A stretch of DNA of 63,803 bases, the filler included, from Reticulomyxa filosa (lineage: Eukaryota > Protista > Foraminifera): the NCBI GenBank assembly GCA_000512085.1. It is 12 parts of 12 records of this genome, joined end to end, with 100 filler letters (N's around TTAATTAATTAA, not from the genome) between each part and the next. Parts side by side here need not be neighbours in the genome. Positions count along the whole stretch, not along the records: positions 1 to 23,860 come from ASPP01011259.1; 11 more parts are not named here. The stretch is one strand, 5' to 3'. The position numbers and the translations under genes were made by a program. The notes beneath the pieces were generated by a model. It ran no database searches. It had not been told where the DNA came from and saw nothing but the letters and a program-made list of their open reading frames with translations. Below, piece by piece: positions 1 through 22,504 of the stretch (position 1 is its first letter; each line of letters opens with the position of its first letter).

Positions 1-243
1 AATAATAGTAATAGCAATAATAATAATATCAAAAGTAACAATAACAATGATAATGACAAAGCCAAGGGAAAAACAAACACAAAGGAAGAAAACGACTTGA
101 ATCGAATATTTCGAGACAAATTTGCATCAACAATGGCGTCGGACACAGAAAATGAGTCTGAGTTTGACACCGACACGACTAATGCAACTGACAATAGTGC
201 TGATGACAATGCTAACAGCAACAATGATAATGATAACAATAAC

Positions 244-275
<32 letters not shown>

Positions 276-3200
276 TGATGAAAATGCTAAAAAAAATAAA
301 AAGAAGAAGAAAAAAAAAAGGTCAAAAAAAAAAAGCAACAAAAAAAAAAGCAGTGCCAAAGCAGACAATGAAAGAAGTAAAGAAACAACGAAACGGATTT
401 GAGCAAGTGAAAGAGAAGCTCGAGGAACTGGACAAGAACAAAAACTCAAAGTTGATGTTCGAGCAATTCCTCGAGCTATGTCAATACTTTGATTTGGACA
501 TAACGGCCGCCGAGGCTAAGCAAATCTATCAACACTCACAGCAATTGACCACGCAATTCGAGTTGGCTTTGCCCGACTTTATCGATCATGTGAAAGAGGA
601 GTACTTATCTTTCCCCGACTTGTCCGCCGCCGAGCTGTTGCAACGACTGTTTGCCAAAACCATTCAGGAGTCGTCAGCCATTGATCGCTTCAACCAAATC
701 CTGCTCGACAACGCAATGTCGCGAGGGGAGTTTGAAATGCACAGCACGTCCCTTCGGCAAGAGCACTGGGAAAGAACACACTCTTTAAACCACGCCGATG
801 ATAACAAAGTCCCCGCCATTGGCGACATCCACGGCAATGGCGACGGTGACGACGACGACAACACCGCGAACAATTGGTTCCCGGACAGTGCTTTGCTTCC
901 CACTCTGTTCGCCGACACAAAAAGTGGAAGCAATTTGTCTTTGGTCCCGCCTTCGTTTGTCAACAATGGCTTGCAATCGTTGGAAACAAACAGTCCAATG
1001 GCCGATTTGCATGAGTTTACCAAAAAATATATATATCTTTTTTAAAGTTATATTACAAATCAAGTGTATATGTATATGTATATATGTAAATATGTATTTG
1101 TGTATCTGCGTATATAACACATACATAAATATATATATACATATATACATATATACATATATGCACATACAAACAGAAATGATGCATTATCGCGGGTGCA
1201 CTCTTTACGAGTGAGCCAACATGGATTGATTGCGCATGACAGCCCATTATTGAGACGTATCCATCGCAATGAGCTGCGACAGTACGTGAACAACCACAAA
1301 AGCATTTTGCAGGAAATGACGCCGGTCAAGTTCATGGAGAGCGTTCGGAAGATACGCACTGGGACGGTGTTGACGGACCAGGAGTTGAATGTAATGTTCG
1401 ATGAATGGAAGCTATGCATCGACCGACAAGATTACAAGTTTTCCGATTTGCATGAGTTAGATTTTTTGCTCTTCCATTTGGGCTTTGTCGTTTCGCGGGG
1501 TCTCTTGTCCAAACTGTCGGCTTCCCCTCTGTCCGCCATCGACGAAGACGCGGAAGTCTCCATTGCATACACCGGCACCGCACATGTCTCACCCATGACG
1601 TTCCTGACACCTTCGTTTATGGAAACGGAAGAAGCGACTAGGAACATGTTCAACCTAAAGTCCGAATTAGGCGCACGTCTAGACAAGACCAGAAACGCAT
1701 TGCCCAGTGGTGCCGAATTGGTGACGACCGGAAGTTTGCAATCGCCAGTGGACGAAAGCATAAGCAGTCCAAAAGAGAAAACTATTCCTTTTACGCTGTC
1801 GGATCTAGTGGGCGAGTTTATTGACGAACATGATAATATTATTCGCATTTCCGCAATCGCGGATGAACCAGACACACCCATGTCCACCAGCGTTCGTCCG
1901 TTTGCTAGTCCTGTCCCTTCGGCTTCCTTGTCCCCTCGCTTCAGCGCAATAGATAAAGTGGAAATGGCCTTGTCACCTGTCGTCCCACACAAGCCCGCCG
2001 TGACGCGGTGGAGAAAGTCGTTGAGCAATGTGCTGCCCCCGCCAATCCCTCATAAAAGCGCAAACTATCCTTTGGTCCCCTCTAGCGGAAGTCTGGACCT
2101 GAACAGCGAGGCCGATACTCTCGACATCAACTTCCCGGATGTGTCCACTCTCACCAACGAGCAGTTCAAAAAGAAAGACGTTCACGTTCGAAGAAGAAAT
2201 CACTCGGCCATTGATGGCTTGGCAGGTACTTGTAAAACTATATTCTACGTGTTTCATGTCGAGTCAATATTATGACTGATATTGACTAAAAATATATTAC
2301 ATATATGTATATATTTTATATACATTTATATATACAAACCATAAAAACGTTAAAAAAAAAAAAAAAAAAAAGTTATAAATGCTTTGTTTGTTTTTTTTAA
2401 CAAGCTCGTCGAGATTCACTCGAAAATACAGACATTGACGCAGTGAACGCATATCAGATAGGCCAAGCTCGATACTGGGTTCGAAGTAACTCAATCCGTG
2501 GCGAAGTCGTGGATGGCATGTTGTCGCCGATTAATCCCCAAGGAGATGGCGAAAAATCGGCGGGAGACCAGTCGCTGCACAGACGCAAGATTAGCCACTC
2601 GAATACTCCGTCGACGGCGACAGCTTATGTGCTTTCGACCAAGTCGACGGGCCCACCGTCCATCCAAGATGACAGCACAAAGAAGAAAGAGAAAGAGAAG
2701 AAGAAGAAGAAGGAGCAAAAAGAAAAAGAAAAAAAGAGATAGTCAAAAGATTAACCGAAGTCAGACGGACACATTTGAAATAATGAGTGATGACAACGAC
2801 AATAATGGCGACAACGACGACAATGACGACAATGACGACAATGACAAACAATAACATAACATCATTCGTGCTGGCAAAGGCACATTATTGGCGACATTGT
2901 CGATAGGATTGCACAACAACGACACTGCACGCAAAGATATGGTCAGCGACGACGAGTCGTTATTCAAAATGGTGGAGAGCTTACCTCTCGGCTCTCCTTC
3001 GTTGAAGTCGCCAGCAGATAACGACGTGGCAGACGCACTGGACCCTTTGGACGTGGCCAGCGACACGAGTGGGATGATGACGATGTTGATGACAGCAAAT
3101 GACCATCAAGAAAAGATTGCAAAAGCGCAGAAGCGAAGAAAGCTAAAGCCGAGTCGGTCGTTTAGCAATTTGATGGAAGGGATCGAAAGCAGCAAGTCGT

Positions 3201-4199
3201 ACCAAGAAATGCTAAAGAAAGAACAAATATCAAAAAAAAAGCAGCAAACATTGACCAATGTTTTTCTTCCCGCTTTACTCACAAAAAACGATGTGCATCC
3301 AAATCATTATCACAGTTCGTTTCCAAAGAGGTCCAGAGCTGTCGTCACGGATTATAGTCCAAGTAATAGCAATGAGCCCACTACCATGGCAACAGCAACA
3401 GCAACAGCGACAGCAACAGCGACAGCAACAGCGACAGCTACGACGACTAACATTATCAAAAACAATTCCTCTCGTTCTAAACACGATCGCAAACATTCGC
3501 TACAATTGCCAATGAGTGAGACAAGTATGGAAATGAAAGGACAGAGTGTGCATCTGACTGACGATGAGTTCGACAAGGCTCCTTCCGCTTCGGAGACTCC
3601 AAAGTTTACGTCATTTGTCCAATCATCGATGCCATTGAGCGAGGAAGAGGAAACTTGGAACGACCAAGAACTCAAAAAACAAATGGAGTCACTTGCTAAC
3701 AAAACTCTTCAAACTGCAAAACCACCCAAAAAAAACAAAAAAAGAAAAGTCCAATCAATTCGAGGCTTTGCTGAAAGGCACTCCACAAAATCTCAATGAG
3801 TTTGATGCGATCGAAATGGACATGACCGAAAAGAATAACACTGCCAAAAAAATCATGTTTGACCCGTCGGCTCACACTGCCTTCTATGATCCTTCCACTA
3901 ATATGATCATTTGGAGTAATGGGAAAAAATGGGTCCGAAAAGATTTTGTTCCATTTCGAGGGCGATGGAGGGATCCTCAAGGTCATCTTATTTCTATTGA
4001 AGAAAATGGAATGGTCACTTTCATTGAACCCAAGGAATTGGGAAACTATGCTGCTGTTGTTTGTGGCTTTTATAAAATTGGAATCAATTATACCAATTAT
4101 ACATACACTGCTAAATTGATTGATAAAAATATGCTCAGGTGGGATAATGGAATTGTCTGGAAACGAGTAGATAAACCAGAATCTTGTTTGGTGATGTGA
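1..4199 (+). CDS. Large multi-exon low-complexity protein (5' end probably outside window) with degenerate EF-hand-like region, C-terminal Trp-rich beta domain and CaaX end
   Basis: ORFs 97-402, 122-1045, 1196-2275, 2443-2742, 2888-3799 and 3693-4199 chain together. The intron 1015-1176 (GTTTAC..CAG) keeps frame (DLHE|NDALSRVH), a second intron lies at about 2226-2404, and the other frame changes fall in poly-A Lys tracts. EF-like loop DKNKNSKLMFEQF; ends ...PESCLVM*. Confidence 0.6.
3389..3442 (+). repeat. Coding hexamer repeat (GCAACA/GCGACA)n giving an (Ala-Thr)n tract
   Basis: Visible directly; translates ATATATATATATATATAT. Confidence 0.9.
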
Positions 4200-6503
4200 A
4201 TACTTTTTTTTTCCCCCCCTTCCTTTCTTCTTCTTCTTTGTTGTGCTCTCAAAATTTGATACAGGTTTTTTTTCTCTTGTCGTAAAGGTGCCAACCAAAA
4301 TGGTCTCTTATAAAGCATTATGTAAATTGAGTATCATTTATGATCCATCTTTTCTTCTTTTTTTTTTTTGTTTCAGTTGCGTGAATCTTCCTAATTCCAT
4401 TGTTAAAATAGAAACACCTTCTGCAGCTTGCCAAAAAAAAAAAGAAACACGTATAATGTAACTTTTTCTCTTTTTTTTTTTGCGGTTTGTAATACGGAAA
4501 AGCATTCAATGAAAACTTGACTTAACAGCTTTACATGACCAAAACACAACTTGTAATTCATAAGAAATATCCAATAAAAGTATATACAATGCACAGTAAA
4601 AGATATTGTTCGTAAAAATTACAAAAGAGAATAACATATTTAACAATTGAAATCAAATTTTAAGCAAGCAAATCCATAAATGTCAATGAAATAACATTAA
4701 TAAACGATATCTTGAAGAACAAAATCTGAAAACACTAAAAACATCAAGTTATTTATGTTAATTGCAATTACTTAGTTTAACATTATTATATAACATACAA
4801 GTTAAATGTAATAATATCAATTGACATTTACTATAAATTAAACACAAAATAATTATTCCGATTTCACGTATATGCCGCCAGATACAAGATAGTATATCAC
4901 AATAATAGTATTAAATTGAGTAAATATTAATAGTAATAGTAATCATTTTAAATGAGACTATATAAAATAGCCAATATTGCATTAAATAATAACTTAAAAA
5001 TTTATTGTATGAATTATTTATATATTATCTGATTTTTCATATCACACGTTATAGTGATAGCTTCAAGGTTAACTATGCTACATTGCATAACAAAATCATG
5101 TGACAAGAAATAGTTTGAATGTATTGTATAAACGTAATATAGCCATACAACTATGAAAATATCAACATGCTTCAAAACAAATACACTAATAAAGATAAAA
5201 CAATTTTAATTACTTCTTCACAAACATAGTAATGATAAAATAACAAAATAAAAATATTAAAACTAAAGTCATTTAATACACATATACACTACATTGAACT
5301 AGACTTCAGCACAATATGTTGAATAGTCAATCAATATGATACTATAAGTACCTTTTTTAGGTAAGTTTTAGTATATTGTTAAATTAAATCTTTCAAAATA
5401 TACAGTTCAGTATATTCATCATAATATCATGAAAATTTAAGAATCAATGGTGTTTTCAAAATTCTTTATTTGTGACAATAAACTTGTCAAAATCCGCAAT
5501 GCACAAATATATTGAGACTTTACCCTCAAATAATTCAAAGCGAACAATTAATTGGTATATTACCAAAGTTTTATTAAAAATTAAACTAAAAATGTACCTA
5601 CTATATCGGCGAAACTCTAAAGGAGTTGTGGAGCTCCAGTGCTAAACTCTGTTCTAAAAACAAAATTTCAGTAAAACAAAATAATCAAATAAAGATAATT
5701 CATAAAAGACAAAGAAAACCACTAACCAAGAAAAGAAGAGCGCTATTTGTTGACAAAATTCCTTTCGTATTGTATTTAGTCTAATGTTTCTGCAATAACA
5801 TACAAATTATTTATTCTTTATTGTTGTTTTGATTGAAAATGTAATGTAATTAATTTGTGTTTTATATTGAGATTCTATCTTTTATTTTTAATTTAAAAAG
5901 CAATACAGACAATTTAATTTCGTTTCTGGGGAAAAAAATTTCATTTTAGTTGTTATTACCACTTTCTTTTTATAGTCTTAGCAAAATATTAATTCTTTTT
6001 AGGTTTTTTTAGCTTTTTTATTGTTGTAACTGTATCAATGTTATTTTTTCATTTTGTTTTGAATAATGATCATCGACGACAATTTTGTCGTCAATGAATG
6101 CTTGTGAGTGATTTTTGTTCTTGAAAGTATTACCATTCGCTTGCAGTGTCGTATCCATAAAAAAAACCAAATAATAAAAATTGGAAAAAAAGAAAAAACG
6201 TGGAACAAAAAAAGAGGGGAAAAATAGTGATCAAAAGTTGTAAACTGCTTTCATTCTAATATACGATTAAGTTTTTGGAAAAATTTCGAAAAATGGAATA
6301 AAGAGACATCACGATTTAATAACAATTAATAAATAAGAAAAATTAATTAATCAATGTTTTTACTGACGTTTTTCACGAATCGATTAGAGTGACCGACAGT
6401 GTCCAGTTTTTTAGTTCGAGACGCTCCAAGTTCAGGAAGCTTTGGGAAAACTTGGTTGCCTTTGTGTTTTTGTTATTCTTTGCTTTCAGTAAAAGTGTAA
6501 AAC

Positions 6504-9154
6504 ATGACTTTGTGGAGAAATATTGTAAGATTACTATGTCTTTCTTTGTCGTTGTGGGGAGCTGGTGCGTTGAACGCAATTGACTTAGCCACCCCAACGT
6601 CAGTCAGTACATTCACCTGTTTTAAGAATTCTGGGTACTCAATCGCGATCGTCCGAGGATATCGGTCGTCTGGTTCAACAGGTCTTAATATTTTTTTTTT
6701 CTTCGCTCCCCTCTTGCTCGCATTTTCAGTTTGCATTTCGTTTTGTCTCAACCTCGTGACAAACAATACATAAAAAAAAAAAACAGATTCCAACGCCCTA
6801 ACCAACATTGCCAACGCAAGATCAGCAGGTTTCCAATATGTTGATGTGTATGCTTTCCCTTGCCGTGGCATAAGTGCAACTACTCAAATGAATCAATTGG
6901 TGGATTACTTGGGGAGCTCAAAATACGGAATGATCTGGTTGGATTTAGAGTCAAACCCACAGTCAAGCTGCGATTGGAAATCGTACAGCAACACGGACAA
7001 CTGTAATTACGTTAAGGAAATGGTTTCCGCTGTGAAAAATCGTGGCAAGCAAGTTGGTATTTACAGCAGCTACGGAAACTGGGAGTCGATATTTGGAAGT
7101 GCTTCTGCTTGCAGCTCTTTTACCAGTGTTCCATTATGGTGAGTTAAAAAAAAAAATCATCAACGCAACGTATACTTCTCGCTGTTACAAAAAAGACAAG
7201 CCCTCATCTGCCCCCCTTTTTTTTAATGGAACATAAAAAAAAAACTTAAAATACGTACATAAAAAAAAAAAAAAGGTATGCTCACTACGACAACACGGCA
7301 AGTTTCAGTGATTGGTCAAATTATCATTCGGTGGATGGACCAAGCCAGCAATGAAACAGTATGTGGGTGACACGACAGTGTGCTCCACGGACGTGGACAA
7401 GAGTATCGAAAATGGCTTTTACACCAGCAGTGCCTACACTGGTGGATCAAGTAATTCCTGCACTAAGCCAGTAAGCCAAGGTGGTGTGTCTGTAAAATTC
7501 CCATCCGGTGTTTCGTTGACATCTATTCAAACATGTGATACCGCGTACACTGATCCTAACAATGCTGGTTAAGAAAAAATTTTTTGTTTTTTATGAGATG
7601 AAGTGTGCCGTAAATTAAAAAAAAATTTGAAGGAAACGTATTAAAAAAATTATGAAAAATAAATGGATAGGCACTTATGTATTTAGTATCTCGTCCTCAG
7701 GATCAACGACGAAATTGTCCACCAACTTCCAATTGGGTGAGTTCAAATCGCCTGACAACGCTGATGGTGTTCGAGTGTCGCCCACTTTAGTGACTTGCTT
7801 GCAGAACATTCGAACCAACCTGCAAGTTGCATTGTACATTGAAACAGCTTATGAGACGACCACTTACAGCAGTAGCCACAATGGAGGTGCCACTCAATCG
7901 TATCACATGAGTGGTACTGGGGCGGATGTGTATATCACTGGAGATGTGATGACGCTCGCCAAGTCAGTCATTTGCCAATGCCGAGATCTGTTTGTATCGA
8001 ATTCCAAAGACATTGGTTTGGGATTGGGTGACACGTTTGTGCATGTGGACATGCGCTCGAGCTATTCTTCCTGGGTGGAAGCGGGAGCAAAATATACCGC
8101 CTCGCAGTGGCAGACTTATATCTACAACACGTATAACTCGTGCAGTGGCAAATACCCTGGCATTAACAATGTCGCAACGGTAAACAACGCAGATCATACC
8201 TCTGGATGCTCTGGAAATGGTGTGAAATTCCCGAACACATGCTTAACTCCTGTTTATTACACGGATTCCAAATACAAAGGTATGAACATCGTTCAATTTT
8301 TTTTTTATCAAATAAAAAAAATAACATGTTATAATTGTTTCAATAATTATATCACAGATCCTAACAACGCCGGTGAAAGCTTGTTCAGTGCCAAGCAAAG
8401 TGGATTGAACACTTTGTTGAGCAACAATTTTGCAGTGAAAGAATTTGTATGCAAAGATGGCAGTGACGGATTCAGATTGGCCCCGGAGTTGGTCCAATGT
8501 TTGCAAGCAGTAAGAGATACGTTAAAAAGTGCAGTGTATATCAACAGTGCCTATCGTACAGTGACGCACAACGCTGATGAAGGTGGTGCCCAATACTCCC
8601 GTCACATGTCCGGAACAGCTGCCGATGCATACAGCAGTGCTGGATTGTGGAACTATGCAAATGCAGTCATTTGCAAATGCCGTGCTATCTTCCAAAGCAA
8701 TGGCCAAGATATTGGTTTGGGATTGGGCGGCACATATATTCACGCTGATATGCGTCCTTATTACAGCTATTGGATTTATTCGGATGCAAGCATGACTGAA
8801 AGTGCCTGGAACAATTACATTATGAGTCAGTGGTCTAAATGCTCCACTTCGTCACGCGTTGAAATTACCGATCAAGATTATAATGAAGATCAAGATCACA
8901 CTGATGAAGATACCGGAGAAGGCGTTGAAACTGACACCGTAGATGGCAGTGCTCAAAGCTCAAGCAGTTCCAGCTCAGGAAATGATAGCAACAATACGAA
9001 CGTCATTGTTCCTGTTGTCGTTGTTGGTGCGCTTGTAATCATTGCTTTGATTGCATATTTCACCTATCGTCGAGTTGCGCTTAACCGCAAATCAGCTCAA
9101 CAAAGAGATGGTGATATTCCTTTAACCAACTATGTCCATCTTCAAGATGCATAA
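6504..9154 (+). CDS. Type I membrane protein: signal peptide + protist-type GH25-like lysozyme + 2x peptidase M15A (Hedgehog/DD-peptidase fold) + acidic/Ser stalk + TM + short tail
   Basis: Exons 6504-6681, 6787-7138, 7276-7567, 7671-8279 and 8358-9154 splice in frame at GT-AG. Lysozyme motifs: IDL, AIVRGYRSSG, VDVYAFP, IWLDLE, GIYSS..W, PLWYAHYD, FGGWTKPAMKQY. M15A motifs: LSxNFxxxEF, HMSGT(G/A)AD, HxDMR in each copy. TM helix VIVPVVVVGALVIIALIAYFTY. Confidence 0.88.
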
Positions 9155-9415
9155 ACTTCCTTTCTTTTTTTTTTATGTCAAAAAAAAAGTCAAGTCACTT
9201 TTTTATGTGCAGATTCTTTTGTTTTTTTTTCTTCTATTGCTACACCTATCAAATTTTCATTTTTTTTTGTTAAAACTTGAAACCATTTACAATGTTGGCC
9301 CAGCCTTTATCGGCCAGCAATGCCATTGTTGCACTTGACAGTATGCTCATTCGCTTGAGTACTATTTGATAAATCCTTCTCAAATCTGATTTTGCAAGGA
9401 GATTCAGAAAAAGCT

Positions 9416-16000: not shown

Positions 16001-17235
16001 TTAATAGAGCATCGCCAGCGTTGCCTCCTCCAACATCATCACGATTGCATTTTTGCTGAAAGCTCCGATGTCATCTGATTCCAAAGTGACAGCAGGGACT
16101 TCGTTCAAGCCAATCTTAAACCGGTTGGGCACCATTCAACCAAAAAGATTTTATTGTTGGTCTTCAACCATTGGACAGTTGCGTTGGCTTCTTTTGATTT
16201 AATGTCTCCTCAGTAGTTCAAGGAAATGGCCATGTATTTATCTTCAGCAGGGTCAAACTCGGTGAATTTCATAAACCAGTTAGCAGGTTTAAAGTAATCA
16301 TCGGTGATTTTTTGCACATCATTGGGAGCGGTACCAGTATCTGCTTTTGGGATGATTGGACTCATGCCAGTGGTCATGAAGTGTAATCGAGGGAATGGGA
16401 CCAAGTTGGTTTGAAATTCATTCAAGTCAACGTTCAATTCACCGCTAAATCGCAATGACGCAGTCATTGAAGAAATAACTTTCGAAATCAATCGGTTCAA
16501 GTTGTTTACATCAGGTTTGGCAATACGCAATTGCTTTTGGCAAATTCCGTAAATGGCCTTGTTATCCAACAACAATGATACCTCGGTGTGGTCTAATAAC
16601 CAGTGAGTAGCCAACAACGAATTGTAACGTTCAACCACACAGGCGGACAAGTTTGGCGATGGGTAAATTTCAAATCCCAATTTTGGTTTCTTTCTGTAAT
16701 CCACTGTCAATCGTTCTAAAATCAAAGCTCCCAAACCGGAACCGGTGCCACCTCCAACACTGTGTCCAATGACAAAGCCCATTACGTTGTCACAATTGTC
16801 AACTAATTTTCTCAATCGGTCATTCACTTTATCAATGATTTGTTTTCCGATTGTATAGTGTCCTCGGGCAAAGTTGTTTGCTGCATCTTCCTTACTATGA
16901 ACAAGGAATTCAGGGTGGAACATGGCTGCAAAAGGACCATTTTTCACATCAATGACGTTAGGTTCCAAATCAAACTGTCCACTTGCGAGCAAAATGCACG
17001 TTACGCGCACTCTAACAATGATCGCCAGCTATTCATACTCAACTGCCAAGTTTCTTGGAACAAATTGGCCACTTCCTGTTTCTTCAAAAGAACACTTTGA
17101 AGGAATCATCTTTGCCACATTTTCCTTTCTTTTTCCACTGTTGTCAATTCCGTGTTCAGCACAGTATTGTTCCCAAATGGCATTGCCCAATTGGATACCG
17201 GCTTGTCCGACTTCAATTGTCAGAACTTCTCTCAT
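16001..17235 (-). pseudogene. Divergent alpha-tubulin pseudogene
   Basis: MREVLTIEVGQAGIQLGNA, EDAANNFARGHYT, GGGTGSG, NVDLNEFQTNLVPFPRLHF and EWCPTGFK are present. Lesions: in-frame TGA at 16210-16212 (NY*GD, normally YRGD), compensating frameshifts near 17090-17120, VERYN and DNKAIY substitutions, and a missing C-terminal helical region after KNAIV. Confidence 0.85.
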
Positions 17236-17811
17236 TTTTTTTAATGGATAAAAAAAGAGCAAACTTTTATTTCGAAAAAACCCCCAACAGTGAGCACTTT
17301 TTCTGTTTAACTTAGCCCAAAATAATTTTTTGTCAAGTATAAAATTTATATTTTCAATTTGTATTTGCATTATCTCCTTTAATAGACACTTTTGTATTCT
17401 AAGCATAAAAAAGTTGAATCTTGTGCTTTCAAGTAAATTGGCTCTCATCTAAGTTTTACATATTTTTTTCTCCAATAACTTTGGATTGGTTATTGAAATC
17501 AATCCAAAAATTAACTGATGCGATTAAGAAAATTATGGTTTGCTCGTGAAATCAGGGAGCGATTACAATTCTTTCTCTCAAAAAAATTTATTGTATGGCA
17601 CAAAACAATTGTTTCGATTTTTTGATTTAACAGAAGTTGTGTTTGTCAAATGTGCAAAAAAACAAGAAAAAGGAAGAACAACCAAATAATCGAAAATAAA
17701 ATCAAATGGTGGCCACACGTTAATAGTTTTGGTTCCATCACATTTATCATCCCCAAGTCCTCAAATTTTGTTATTTGTAGCAAAAAACAACTTTTTGTTT
17801 TTGACCGTCAT

Positions 17812-21177: not shown

Positions 21178-22504
21178 ATGCAAGTGCAAACAGAAGATTT
21201 TGAAGCAGAAGAAGAAAAAGCAGTTGTCTTAGATAATGGGACAAACTTGCTAAAAATTGGTTTTAGTGGTGAGTCTTCAGGACCACGACTTGTGCTTCCA
21301 AACATTGTTGGAAGACCAAAGGAAGCAGGAATAAGCGCTGGAATGGGACAAAAAAGTTTGTACATAGGCGATGAAGCCCAAACAAGAAGAGGGATATTAA
21401 ATCTTTCATACCCTATGGAACGTGGTATGATTACATCATGGGATGACATGGAAAATGTGTGGGTTCATGGATTATTTAGGTTAAAAAATGTATATGTATA
21501 TATATATTTTAATAAATAAACAAAATTGGTTTTTTTTTTTTTTTGTTGTTTTTTTTTCTATAAACATAAAAGTGAATTGGGTATAGAGCCTGAAAACCAT
21601 CCAATTTTATTAACAGACACAGCATTAAATCCAGAAACGAATCGTTTGAAAATGGCAGAAGTTTTGATGATTGTAGTGTATGACTGTTGGCAATGAATAT
21701 TTTTTAATAAAAAAAAAAAAAAAAAAAAAATAGATAATGTTCGAAAAATTCAATTTCCATTCTGTATACATTGCCACACAAGCAGTATTATCATTGTATG
21801 GCGGAGGTGCACATACAGGATTAGTAATAGATTCCGGCGAAGGAACTACTCATTGTGTGCCAATTTACGAAGGATATGCGATATCCCATAGCATTGAAAG
21901 ATTAGATATTGGTGGAAGAGATGTGACAGAACATTTAATGAAAACCTTAATGAAAAAACAAGCAGAAGAAGGAAAAGGTATAAAGTGTGTAACCAGTGCA
22001 GAAAGAGAAATAGTAAGAGATATAAAAGAAACATGTGGTTCTGTTAGTTTAAATCAAGACAACAATAATAATAGTAATAATAATGTTGAATATGAATTAC
22101 CTGATGGACAGACTTTATCTATTGGCGAAGAAAGATTTGAATGTACAGAGGTCATGTTTAATCCAGAATTAATGGGTATTGATAGCAAAGGTATTCATAA
22201 ATTAGTTTATGATAGCATTGAATCTTGTGATCTTCATTTAAAAAAAGAATTATATGGTAATATTGTATTATCTGGAGGAAATACTTTATTTCCAAATATG
22301 AAAGAACGCATTCAAATGGAACTTAAAAGTCTTGTTCCATTTAATCAAGACCGTATTCATGTAGAAGCGCCTAATGATAGAAAATATAGTGTATGGATTG
22401 GAGGTAGTATACTTTCTTCTTTACCTGTTTTTCGTGAACTTTGGATTGATAAAATGGAATTTTCTGAAAGTAAAGGAAATGCTATTTTACGAAAATGTTT
22501 TTAA
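21178..22504 (+). CDS. Divergent actin / actin-related protein, 3 exons
   Basis: Exons 21178-21479, 21573-21660 and 21734-22504. Motifs [62 protein letters not shown]; ends RKCF. Confidence 0.9.

What the first reader, a model, noticed from the sequence alone, without database searches (positions are those of the whole stretch)
6504..9154. Membrane-anchored three-catalytic-domain peptidoglycan hydrolase (GH25 lysozyme + 2x M15A peptidase) in a eukaryote
Seen: five exons splice into one ORF with signal peptide, lysozyme domain with intact D...DxE (IDL; WLDLE), two tandem M15A domains with H-x6-D and HxD Zn ligands, an acidic stalk, a TM helix and a tail ending YVHL. Established: GH25 muramidases cut the glycan backbone, M15A/MepK(YcbK)-like enzymes cut peptide stems or cross-links, and protist/nematode GH25-like lysozymes are normally small soluble single-domain proteins. 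Inference: an endolysin-like glycan+peptide cutting enzyme tethered in the phagolysosome or on the reticulopodial surface of a bacterivore. I do not recognise this architecture from described proteins. The ORF track splits it into four pieces, so automatic annotation could miss the fusion.
Basis: partly seen in the sequence, partly recalled or inferred. Interest (0 to 1): 0.88.

Follow-up and report, generated by a model that had tools for sequence, protein, structure and literature searches.

The report
Membrane-anchored lysozyme–peptidase fusion in a foraminiferan
The amoeba-like protist Reticulomyxa filosa has one spliced, expressed gene that joins a lysozyme to two phage-type cell-wall peptidase domains and a membrane anchor; the public annotation records only its rear two-thirds, as a "hypothetical protein".

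Summary
The finding is real. The window is Reticulomyxa filosa nuclear DNA. Five exons (6504-6681, 6787-7138, 7276-7567, 7671-8279, 8358-9154) have GT..AG introns, and all four introns are skipped in contigs of a public run.

The layout is a signal peptide, a GH25 lysozyme with D...DxE...D intact, two Peptidase_M15_3 domains, an acidic/Ser stalk, a TM helix and a tail with YVHL.

Corrections:
- As assembled, exon 3 is frame-broken by one missing base after 7319. The transcript contig carries an extra G and the paralog an extra C, so the gene has 742 codons and is intact.
- The NCBI model RFI_15378 starts inside exon 3 and lacks the lysozyme.
- The first M15 domain has lost the family's conserved Arg. 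Its closest relatives have also lost a zinc ligand. It is probably not a third catalytic domain but a binding or impaired one.
- The architecture has precedents: a GH25+M15_3 protein in a rumen fungus, and GH24+M15_3 endolysins in prophages.

The same fusion occurs in two environmental relatives. The M15 module also occurs with a GH24 head in an environmental contig and with a Kelch head in the foraminiferan Nonionella.

Verdict: a new variant of a known kind, of moderate interest. Location and activity were not tested.

The parts
6504..6681 (+). Exon 1. Start codon, signal peptide (about 6504-6572, MTLWRNIVRLLCLSLSLWGAGAL) and first GH25 strand with the catalytic Asp (AIDLA, 6576-6590). Ends in phase 1 (g|at = Asp).
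   Evidence: BLASTP of the exon to the N-terminus of P0074: 38% identity, E 8e-10. X1 contigs cover 6477-6675 and jump to 6781.
6682..6786 (+). Intron 1: 105 nt, GT..AG, 33% GC.
   Evidence: Joint 6675>6781 in X1; its position is ambiguous by 6 nt because CAACAG and AAACAG are nearly the same.
6787..7138 (+). Exon 2. GH25 core with the DxE catalytic pair (WLDLE, 6936-6950).
   Evidence: phmmer found 704 relatives. 50% identity to P0074, E 1e-43. 29 of 30 Atlas hits are PF01183. PHROG 291 endolysin, 4e-8.
7139..7275 (+). Intron 2: 137 nt, GTGAGT..AG.
   Evidence: Joint 7137>7275, GT..AG with cut +1, in the X1 contig listed as record 4, which has 2 other differing letters.
7276..7567 (+). Exon 3. 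End of GH25 (W-YAHYDN..., FGGW...KQY, VDKS with the last catalytic Asp at 7390-7404), then a Cys-containing linker ending DPNNAG. The assembly lacks one base after 7319, which breaks the frame.
   Evidence: paralog C36741 has an extra C and a 111-aa open frame. table 4 (transcript has an extra G after 7319). (39% identity to P0074, E 4e-19).
7568..7670 (+). Intron 3: 103 nt, GTTAAG..AG, 20% GC. It contains the in-frame TAA at 7570-7572 that would end a lysozyme-only protein if the intron were retained.
   Evidence: Joints 7566>7670 (GT..AG, cut +1) and 7565>7670 in X1. Depth is 0.81 inside the intron against 36 and 53 in the flanking bins.
7671..8279 (+). Exon 4. M15-1 domain (Pfam match about 7778-8050). 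Zn motifs SYHMSGTGAD 7898-7927 and FVHVDMR 8036-8056 are present, but AYETT (7847-7861) stands where the family has YR. A second Cys/FP linker follows.
   Evidence: Pfam PF08291 at 29.2 bits against a cutoff of 23.2. PHROG 894 endolysin, 4.5e-14. Alignment A2. dN/dS 0.31 against the paralog and 0.07 against L024.
8280..8357 (+). Intron 4: 78 nt, GTATGA..AG, 18% GC, with no stop in frame. This is why the ORF track and the NCBI model read through it.
   Evidence: An 892-nt X1 contig joins 8277 to 8357 with one G between. P0002 has ...SKYKDPNNSG... without the insert.
8358..9154 (+). Exon 5.
- M15-2 domain, about 8360-8845: AYRTV 8549-8563, SRHMSGTAAD 8597-8626, YIHADMR 8735-8755.
- Acidic/Ser-rich stalk, about 8846-8998.
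- TM helix 8999-9070, followed by RR.
- Cytoplasmic tail 9071-9151 with YVHL at 9131-9142.
- Stop TAA 9152-9154.
   Evidence: Pfam PF08291 at 54.9 bits. PHROG 894, 3.5e-25. Model pLDDT 90, best PDB match 1lbu. Hydropathy and composition. X1 contig covers 8755-9242.

Best explanation
This is one expressed nuclear gene of Reticulomyxa filosa. It encodes a 742-residue type I membrane protein. Its lumenal or extracellular part carries an N-terminal protist-type (Lys1-like) GH25 muramidase, then two tandem zinc peptidase domains of the M15A / Peptidase_M15_3 kind, then an acidic, Ser-rich stalk. A single TM helix and a 27-residue cytoplasmic tail with a conserved YxxPhi motif follow.

Proposed mechanism (inferred):
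- The protein enters the secretory pathway.
- The tyrosine motif sorts it between the plasma membrane or reticulopodial surface and endosomes or phagosomes.
- Facing ingested or captured bacteria, the GH25 domain cuts the MurNAc-GlcNAc backbone and M15-2 cuts the peptide stem or cross-link. The sacculus is thus attacked on both bond types, as by a bifunctional phage endolysin.
- M15-1 keeps the fold and, in this copy, the three Zn ligands, but has lost the conserved Arg. It most likely acts as a weak or inactive domain that binds peptide stems.

Origin (inferred):
- The GH25 head is the ordinary eukaryotic single-domain lysozyme.
- The M15 module is of phage or bacterial descent. It was acquired once in the lineage, gained a Cys-bearing insert and a C-terminal helix, and was duplicated before the three known carriers of the fusion split.
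For: Shown here:
- Organism and locus: 100% match to R. filosa RFI_15378 on a 23,860-nt contig.
- Eukaryotic neighbours: a tubulin with GGGTGSG at 16210-17448 and an actin-like ORF at 21178-22504.
- All four introns are spliced in X1 contigs, and the chain of contigs runs from 6477 to 9242.
- The frame is restored by an extra base in the transcript and in the paralog.
- The same fusion occurs elsewhere. L024/P0002 is intron-free, 59% identical, and ends ...YVHMQDQE. In L026/P0074 one exon holds the signal peptide, the whole GH25, the linker and the start of M15-1; the rest of M15-1 and the start of M15-2 follow.
- GH25: catalytic D / DxE / D are aligned. The P0074 GH25 model has pLDDT 96, and its top 18 Foldseek matches are all GH25-fold proteins, from 1jfx at E 2e-9.
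- M15: Pfam scores are above the gathering cutoff for both domains. The M15-2 model has pLDDT 90, with best matches 1lbu, ChiX and LysECD7. H-x6-D and HxD are conserved.
- All domains are under purifying selection, with dN/dS from 0.07 to 0.42.
- The eukaryote-type M15 domains form one group (99/94), and the domain-1 copies form a clade (99/91).
- The YxxPhi motif is also present in P0002 (YVHM) and P0004 (YTKV).
Against: - No enzymatic, metal-binding or localisation data exist.
- No single contig or read spans all five exons, so a single mRNA is inferred from overlapping and adjacent spliced contigs. Contigs cannot show transcript ends.
- Run X1 is labelled RNA only by a guess. That it is cDNA rests on the intron-less joints.
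- Several X1 contigs differ from the window by 5-10%, so part of the support comes from the 85-89% paralog or another strain.
- The signal peptide and topology were judged by eye, by hydropathy and by alignment to relatives, not by a dedicated predictor.
- The GH25 fold was tested on a homolog (52% identical over exon 2), not on this protein, because the spliced protein was not assembled.
- The bond specificity of M15_3 domains (DD-carboxypeptidase, LD-endopeptidase, L-Ala-D-Glu) cannot be read from sequence.
- The role of the lost Arg rests on what is known of VanX and M15 enzymes, not on a test.
Confidence: 0.72

Rival explanations
1. The protein is the same, but its working site is the outer face of the reticulopodial network, where it attacks or holds bacteria before ingestion, or is shed by cleavage in the stalk. 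The phagolysosome lumen is not where it acts.
For: A type I topology puts the enzymes outside the cell whenever the protein is at the plasma membrane. The long acidic, Ser-rich stalk of about 50 residues would hold the domains away from the membrane. The YxxPhi motif lies 20 residues from the TM helix and 3 from the C-terminus. By general knowledge, that spacing from the membrane fits endocytic cycling signals as well as lysosomal ones.
Against: Nothing here distinguishes the two sites, and a cycling protein would visit both. GH25 lysozymes of protists are generally regarded as lysosomal or digestive (general knowledge, not tested).
Confidence: 0.2
2. The gene is a decaying pseudogene: the frameshift after 7319 is real in the genome.
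For: The assembled sequence has the frame break. Broken GH25 and M15 copies with stops exist elsewhere in the genome, at C40777 and C19735.
Against: A transcript contig almost identical to this locus carries the extra base. No other frame break or stop occurs in 2.2 kb of coding sequence. dN/dS is 0.15-0.42 against the paralog and about 0.1 against another species. All catalytic motifs of GH25 and M15-2 are intact.
Confidence: 0.04
3. There are two genes or two products: a secreted lysozyme ending at TAA 7570-7572, and a separate membrane peptidase starting at ATG 7652.
For: The ORF track and the NCBI model suggest it. The donor of intron 3 (GTTAAG) is immediately followed by an in-frame stop, in the paralog too, so a retained intron would give a soluble lysozyme. 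Weak depth of 0.81 is seen inside the intron.
Against: Two X1 contigs join 7566/7567 to 7670/7671 in frame, at depth 18-20. L024 and L026 have the junction in continuous coding sequence. A protein starting at ATG 7652 would have no signal peptide.
Confidence: 0.03
4. The protein manages bacterial associates or peptidoglycan-derived signals, for example by trimming muropeptides of symbionts, rather than digesting prey.
For: Horizontally acquired peptidoglycan enzymes are reported to serve symbiont control in insects (PMC8689515 and PMC9116674, abstracts listed).
Against: A glycan plus peptide double attack with a lysozyme head is the endolysin or digestive pattern.
Confidence: 0.05

Closest known systems
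Neocallimastix californiae protein A0A1Y2FMX2 (GH25 PF01183 + Peptidase M15 PF08291), described in PMC7379824
   Same: A eukaryotic protein with a signal peptide, in which a GH25 muramidase is followed by a PF08291 peptidase, encoded by an intron-containing gene. The authors interpret it as derived by horizontal transfer.
   Different: The fungal GH25 is reported as closest to a bacterial (Lachnoclostridium) lysozyme, whereas here it is the protist Lys1-like type. The fungal protein has one M15 domain, and rusticalin-type Cys-rich repeats precede each domain. The paper reports no TM anchor (the word 'transmembrane' does not occur in it).
Prophage and phage endolysins with Phage_lysozyme (GH24, PF00959) + Peptidase_M15_3 (e.g. 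P0242, 291 aa, on a 248-kb bacterial contig), and NAGPA + M15_3 phage proteins (P0046)
   Same: A glycan-cutting head followed by a C-terminal M15_3 peptidase. The M15 part is 36-47% identical to M15-2. The environmental protein P0004 has this same GH24 then M15 order, and aligns with P0242 across both domains (27% identity, E 5e-27).
   Different: These proteins are cytoplasmic and holin-dependent. They have no signal peptide, stalk, TM helix or sorting motif. They have one M15 domain, and lack the Cys-bearing insert (ICxCRxLF...DIGLG) and the C-terminal W...W...C helix of the eukaryote-type module. Their head is GH24 or NAGPA, not GH25.
Protist-type (Lys1-like) GH25 lysozymes, e.g. of Bolivina argentea (P0078), Stylonychia, Halteria and Paramecium (P0284, P0298, P0325)
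   Same: 35-52% identity to exon 2. They share the signal peptide, the G-x-D start, the WxDxE motif, the PLWYAxYD and FGGW..P..KQY motifs, and the conserved Cys pattern.
   Different: All 79 relatives of 196-401 aa found with P0074 lack PF08291, and nearly all are single-domain proteins of about 215 aa. None has the linker, the M15 domains or the anchor.
Streptomyces albus G zinc DD-peptidase (PDB 1lbu, MEROPS M15A) and E. coli MepK (YcbK)
   Same: LAS fold. Conserved motifs are the YR Arg, S-x-H-x6-D, and a C-terminal His. 1lbu is the best match by sequence (E 5.5e-4) and by fold (E 1e-4).
   Different: Identity is only 26% over 125 aligned columns. The NCBIfam MepK equivalog scores 14.6 bits against a cutoff of 185, so this is not a MepK ortholog. 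Bond specificity is unknown.
Laterally acquired NlpC/P60 peptidoglycan hydrolases of Trichomonas vaginalis (bioRxiv 10.1101/320382, listed)
   Same: A bacterivorous or bacteria-associated protist using peptidoglycan peptidases of bacterial descent against bacteria (title and abstract only).
   Different: A different peptidase family (a cysteine peptidase), and not fused to a lysozyme. The paper was not read in full.

Membership tests
Glycoside hydrolase family 25 (Pfam PF01183), Lys1-like subgroup | Significant sequence match to the family model. | tested here: inconclusive
The exons were scanned one by one, and none reaches PF01183 at E<=1; exon 2 gives only the clan relative PF08924 at 0.005. 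The nearest full-length relatives score 24-49 bits against a cutoff of 27. 72 of the 79 relatives of P0074 carry precomputed PF01183. 29 of 30 Atlas hits are PF01183.
Glycoside hydrolase family 25 (Pfam PF01183), Lys1-like subgroup | Catalytic acidic residues: N-terminal Asp, the DxE pair, and the C-terminal Asp. | tested here: met
   AIDLA aligns with GIDVS, WLDLE with WLDLE, and DVDKS with GVDKN of P0074. D5 and E98 are nearly invariant in alignment A3.
Glycoside hydrolase family 25 (Pfam PF01183), Lys1-like subgroup | GH25 barrel fold. | tested here: met
   Tested on a proxy. P0074:21-240 (52% identical to exon 2) has pLDDT 96. Its Foldseek top 18 matches are all GH25-fold proteins: 17 named lysozymes, muramidases, endolysins or a GH25 hydrolase, plus one uncharacterised protein (1sfs). 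The best is 1jfx, with TM about 0.7. It was not tested on this protein itself.
Glycoside hydrolase family 25 (Pfam PF01183), Lys1-like subgroup | Muramidase activity. | not testable with these tools
   Needs a sacculus or muropeptide assay.
Peptidase M15A / Pfam Peptidase_M15_3 (PF08291) | Match above the Pfam gathering score. | tested here: met
   M15-1 scores 29.2 bits and M15-2 54.9 bits, against a cutoff of 23.2.
Peptidase M15A / Pfam Peptidase_M15_3 (PF08291) | Zn ligands H-x6-D plus the C-terminal His (HxD). | tested here: met
   Both domains of the window have them. In M15-1 of the paralog C19390 and of P0002, the Asp is Asn.
Peptidase M15A / Pfam Peptidase_M15_3 (PF08291) | Conserved Arg of the (S/G)YR motif. 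| tested here: not met
   This holds for M15-1 only: AYE in the window and the paralog, AYM in P0002. M15-2 and all other aligned domains have YR. M15-2 therefore meets the feature. M15-1 is a family member by descent but probably not an active one.
Peptidase M15A / Pfam Peptidase_M15_3 (PF08291) | LAS (lysostaphin / DD-carboxypeptidase / hedgehog) fold. | tested here: met
   The M15-2 model has pLDDT 90. Its best PDB matches are 1lbu, 5opz (ChiX), 8q2g (LysECD7), then hedgehog N-domains and VanX/VanY.
E. coli MepK (YcbK) orthologs, NCBIfam NF053624 | Equivalog score cutoff. | tested here: not met
   14.6 bits against a cutoff of 185.
Type I membrane protein with tyrosine-based sorting signal | N-terminal signal peptide, a single C-terminal TM helix with basic residues on the cytoplasmic side, and YxxPhi in the tail. 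| tested here: inconclusive
   The hydrophobic N-terminus aligns with the signal peptides of relatives. The TM helix has a KD maximum of 3.01 and is followed by RR. YVHL is conserved as YVHM in P0002 and YTKV in P0004. No dedicated predictor and no localisation data were available.

The most novel reading that the evidence does not exclude
Foraminifera possess a lineage-specific 'anchored endolysin' tool kit. A phage-derived M15 peptidase module, remodelled with disulfides and joined to a stalk, a TM helix and a YxxPhi tail, is combined with interchangeable heads: the native GH25 lysozyme in Reticulomyxa and two environmental relatives, a GH24 phage lysozyme in P0004, and a Kelch propeller in Nonionella stella. 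In the Reticulomyxa branch the first of the duplicated M15 domains has turned from an enzyme into a cell-wall-binding domain. A eukaryote would thus have rebuilt the 'catalytic domains plus wall-binding domain' logic of phage endolysins on a membrane tether. Retention of intron 3, whose donor is followed at once by a conserved in-frame TAA, could additionally release a soluble lysozyme-only isoform.
Probability: 0.3. Interest if true: 0.7.

Novelty: new variant of a known kind. Interest (0 to 1): 0.55.

Why it matters
How large bacterivorous protists such as Foraminifera kill and digest bacteria is poorly known at the molecular level. This gene gives a concrete, testable effector.

- It is a tethered enzyme that should cut both the glycan and the peptide of peptidoglycan.
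- It was built by fusing a native eukaryotic lysozyme to a peptidase module of phage or bacterial descent.
- It is expressed, under purifying selection, and present in at least three related organisms. The same peptidase module also occurs in a distant foraminiferan.

It is also a clean example of two other things. A single-base assembly error together with an in-frame short intron hid a domain fusion from the public annotation (RFI_15378). And a duplicated enzyme domain is apparently drifting toward a non-catalytic role.

It is not a new enzyme class, and glycosidase-plus-M15 fusions are known in phages and in one fungal case. The value is therefore moderate.

Tried and rejected
- Two scans of metagenome contigs, one with the alignment of eukaryote-type M15 domains and one with P0002, found no relative. 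This says little, since L024 to L026 come from other collections.
- phmmer of exon 2 against PDB sequences found nothing meaningful, so the GH25 assignment had to come from relatives and from the fold.
- NCBIfam gave no family for exon 2, and only sub-threshold MepK hits for the M15 domains.
- Runs X2 and X3, from the same study as X1, held nothing of the stretch.
- An alternative acceptor for exon 4 at 7700/7701 (CCTCAG|GA), which also keeps the frame, was my first model. It was rejected because the transcript joints and P0002 (DPNRAGTYVFSIS...) show the acceptor at 7670/7671.
- Alternative acceptors for exon 3 (7308, 7344, 7348, 7359) were checked by hand as a way round the frameshift. None gives the right frame.
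- Contamination by bacterial or phage DNA is rejected: the gene has four spliced introns, eukaryotic neighbours and low GC.
- Everything was done exon by exon by reference, and the whole GH25 domain was studied on the natural intron-free homolog P0074.
Full report
**What is there.** The window is a 23,860-nt contig of Reticulomyxa filosa, a naked freshwater foraminiferan. The 500-aa ORF at 7652-9154 is 100% identical to NCBI 'hypothetical protein RFI_15378', whose record lists a longest contig of 23,860 nt. The assembly has 101.9 Mb in 50,809 contigs. Neighbouring ORFs are eukaryotic: a tubulin with the GGGTGSG signature at 16210-17448 on the minus strand, and an actin-like ORF at 21178-22504. 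Coding stretches have 36-43% GC and spacers 24-29%.

**Gene model.** Reading the DNA gives five exons: 6504-6681, 6787-7138, 7276-7567, 7671-8279 and 8358-9154. The four introns are 105, 137, 103 and 78 nt, all GT..AG and 18-33% GC. Codons split by the introns read g|at (Asp), tg|g (Trp), g|gc (Gly) and g|at (Asp).

The only public run that holds the stretch (X1, labelled 'RNA?' by a guess) gave contigs that skip every intron:
- 7137>7275 and 7566>7670 are reported as GT..AG with the cut one place to the right, which are exactly 7138|7276 and 7567|7671.
- 8277>8357 with one G between equals 8279|8358.
- 6675>6781 equals 6681|6787, because the six letters before each site (CAACAG and AAACAG) are nearly the same.

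Contigs lie on 6477-6675, 6815-7025, 7029-7137 plus exon 3, 7329-7563, 7729-8277 plus 8357-8698, and 8755-9242. The whole gene is therefore represented in spliced form, although no single contig spans it. Intron-less joints at GT..AG sites show that X1 holds cDNA.

On the window's letters, exon 3 reads W-YAHYDNTASFSDWS in one frame and LSFGGWTKPAMKQYVGD... in another. No alternative acceptor repairs this.
- The X1 contig that bridges intron 2, which has only two other differing letters, has an extra G after 7319 (table 4).
- The paralogous contig C36741 (89% identical protein) has an extra C at the same place and an open frame of 111 aa.

With that base the CDS is 2226 nt, or 742 codons. I take the break for an assembly error or strain difference, not decay. 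There is no other defect, and dN/dS is 0.15-0.42 against the paralog and about 0.1 against another species.

The break explains the public annotation. RFI_15378 starts at MKQYVGD inside exon 3, uses a wrong intron 3, and reads through intron 4, which is 78 nt and stop-free. The lysozyme is thus absent from the record, which carries only PF08291.

**Domains.** Each was searched by reference.

*Signal peptide.* Exon 1 begins with a signal-peptide-like MTLWRNIVRLLCLSLSLWGAGAL. It aligns with the N-terminus of relatives.

*GH25 lysozyme.*
- Exon 2 finds 704 relatives by phmmer in 1.84 billion representatives. The best are proteins of about 215-225 aa that score on Pfam Glyco_hydro_25.
- 29 of 30 ESM-Atlas neighbours are PF01183, and PHROG 291 'endolysin' matches at 4e-8.
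- The catalytic residues are in place: AIDLA, WLDLE and DVDKS align with GIDVS, WLDLE and GVDKN of P0074.
- For the fold I used a natural intron-free homolog, P0074:21-240. Its model has pLDDT 96. Its best 18 PDB matches are all GH25-fold proteins: 17 named lysozymes, muramidases, endolysins or a GH25 hydrolase, plus one uncharacterised protein. They include Cellosyl 1jfx, fungal muramidases, SleM, and the phiSM101 and Cpl-1 endolysins.
- The exons alone do not reach the Pfam GH25 threshold. That membership feature therefore stays formally inconclusive for this protein itself.

*Two M15 domains.*
- Exons 4 and 5 each hold a Peptidase_M15_3 domain, at 29.2 and 54.9 bits against a cutoff of 23.2. 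PHROG 894 'endolysin' matches at 4.5e-14 and 3.5e-25.
- The M15-2 model (pLDDT 90) matches the Streptomyces albus Zn DD-peptidase 1lbu best. ChiX, LysECD7 and the hedgehog, VanX and VanY fold group follow. 1lbu is also the only PDB hit by sequence.

*Stalk, anchor and tail.*
- After M15-2 the 63 residues before the TM helix hold 14 acidic, 21 Ser/Thr and 2 basic residues. The first 12 of them close the M15-2 helix, and the rest form the acidic, Ser-rich stalk of about 50 residues.
- The TM helix has a KD maximum of 3.01 and is followed by RR.
- The tail is RVALNRKSAQQRDGDIPLTNYVHLQDA.

**Is the first M15 domain catalytic?** Alignment A2 shows the H-x6-D and HxD motifs in both domains of the window. 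The Arg of the (S/G)YR motif is present in M15-2 and in 10 of the 12 aligned domains; the two exceptions are both first domains, where it is Glu in the window's M15-1 and Met in P0002's M15-1. The paralog's M15-1, translated, also has Glu there. The Zn-binding Asp is Asn in M15-1 of both of those relatives. The first domain of the more distant L026 homolog still has YR and the Asp. From what is known of VanX and M15 enzymes, this Arg stabilises the transition state (my knowledge, not tested). M15-1 is nevertheless well conserved, with dN/dS of 0.31 and 0.07. The best reading is a domain kept for something other than efficient hydrolysis, most simply for binding peptide stems. 'Three catalytic domains' is thus probably one too many.

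**Relatives and origin.** The same fusion exists elsewhere.
- L024/P0002 (JGI sample 3300031411) is an intron-free contig whose reading frame runs from the GH25 core through ...DPNRAG-TYVFSIS..., two M15 domains, stalk, TM helix and ...YVHMQDQE. It is interrupted only by one TAG where the window has Tyr.
- L026/P0074 (ENA ERZ893790) is genomic. One exon holds the signal peptide, the complete GH25, the linker and the start of M15-1. An intron follows, then the rest of M15-1, the second linker and the start of M15-2.
- R. filosa itself has a second copy, 81-89% identical, scattered over the small contigs C50772, C36741, C19390, and C26150 with its twin C48106. It also has broken fragments on C40777 and C19735.

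The M15 module also occurs with other heads:
- P0004 has a signal peptide, a GH24 phage lysozyme, the same FP...DPN linker, M15, a TM helix and a YTKV tail.
- P0003 has Kelch repeats, M15 and a hydrophobic end. It comes from the rotaliid foraminiferan Nonionella stella.

In a tree of 40 M15 domains, the nine eukaryote-type domains form one group (99/94). The first-domain copies of the window, the paralog, P0002 and L026 form a clade (99/91). The duplication is therefore older than these organisms' divergence. The root and donor are not resolved.

The nearest non-eukaryotic relatives (36-47% identity) fall into three kinds:
- 130-aa single-domain proteins;
- 275-291-aa Phage_lysozyme+M15_3 proteins, of which P0242 sits in a phage-like gene row on a 248-kb bacterial contig;
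- 338-aa NAGPA+M15_3 phage proteins.

P0004 aligns with P0242 over both domains. This is compatible with transfer of a two-domain endolysin but does not prove it.

The GH25 head is of the ordinary protist type. Its relatives are single-domain lysozymes of ciliates and of the foraminiferan Bolivina argentea, among others. None of the 79 relatives of 196-401 aa carries PF08291.

**How it most likely works.**
- *Shown:* an expressed, spliced, selectively constrained gene encodes signal peptide, GH25, M15, M15, stalk, TM helix and tail.
- *Inferred:* type I topology puts the enzymes on the outside or the lumenal side. The conserved YxxPhi routes the protein through endocytic, phagosomal or lysosomal membranes. 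There the GH25 domain cleaves glycan strands and M15-2 cleaves stem peptides or cross-links of prey bacteria, while M15-1 helps to hold the substrate.
- *Open:* whether the main site is the reticulopodial surface or the food vacuole cannot be told from sequence.

**Comparison and novelty.**
- Glycosidase-plus-M15 lytic enzymes are standard in phages.
- A secreted GH25+PF08291 protein of the rumen fungus Neocallimastix californiae has been described (PMC7379824).
- What I did not find described is the native protist GH25 fused to two eukaryote-adapted M15 domains on a membrane tether with a sorting motif, or any account of this family in Foraminifera. Searches for Reticulomyxa with lysozyme or peptidoglycan, and for PF08291 in eukaryotes, gave nothing.

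I therefore rate it a new variant of a known kind.

**Limits.**
- There are no activity or localisation data.
- The single-mRNA claim rests on contigs, some of which come from a 5-10% divergent copy.
- The GH25 fold was tested on a proxy, and M15-1 was not folded.
- The spliced protein was not scanned as a whole.

Noticed in passing
window 7319-7320: The public R. filosa assembly lacks one base here relative to a near-identical transcript contig (extra G) and to the paralog (extra C). This single error, together with the stop-free 78-nt intron 4, produced the truncated NCBI model RFI_15378. That model is 552 aa, starts at MKQYVGD and reads through intron 4.
   Followed up: yes
L024:319-321: The intron-free environmental homolog has an in-frame TAG exactly where the window has a Tyr codon (WYAH*DN against WYAHYDN). 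Its long ORF ends with TAA. This could be a sequencing error, a polymorphism or a null allele. One case is too little to suggest codon reassignment.
   Followed up: partly
window 7567-7572 and L015 (C36741): The donor of intron 3 is followed at once by an in-frame stop (G|GTTAA), in this gene and in its paralog. A retained intron would give a secreted lysozyme-only protein ending ...DPNNAG. Depth inside the intron is low but not zero (0.81).
   Followed up: no
L025:746-2062 (P0004, ENA ERZ23490279): An environmental, apparently eukaryotic gene encodes a signal peptide, a GH24 phage-type lysozyme, the same linker and eukaryote-type M15 domain, a TM helix and a YTKV tail. It is a sister architecture with a different lysozyme head.
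   Followed up: partly
P0003, P0276, P0277 (EukProt EP01083, Nonionella stella): A rotaliid foraminiferan has the eukaryote-type M15 domain behind a Kelch beta-propeller and ahead of a hydrophobic C-terminus. A Kelch head on a peptidoglycan peptidase has no obvious explanation.
   Followed up: no
G000 contigs C26150 and C48106: The two contigs carry the same paralogous M15-2/stalk/TM exon with identical scores (476.8 bits, 85% identity), so they are probably duplicate or allelic contigs in the assembly. The second gene copy is split over at least five small contigs.
   Followed up: partly
G000 C40777:1021-1335 and C19735:4924-5199: Broken copies with several in-frame stops: a GH25 fragment (68% identity, 4-6 stops) and an M15 fragment (67% identity, 3 stops). 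The family has left pseudogene debris in the genome.
   Followed up: no
G000 C5020:82-584, C27975:1277-1369, C5113:8499-8994: More distant GH25 lysozyme genes (46-55% identity) with no M15 match on the same contigs. They are presumably the ordinary single-domain lysozymes of R. filosa.
   Followed up: no
window 97-4199 (+): A series of long ORFs rich in low-complexity runs (poly-Asn, Lys-rich, poly-Thr/Ala). It is probably one multi-exon gene upstream of the finding. No function was looked for.
   Followed up: no
window 16210-17448 (-) and 21178-22504 (+): A tubulin gene (MREVLTIEVGQAGIQLGN..., GGGTGSG) split by an intron, and an actin-like or ARP gene in at least two exons. They are useful markers that the contig is nuclear eukaryotic DNA.
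   Followed up: no
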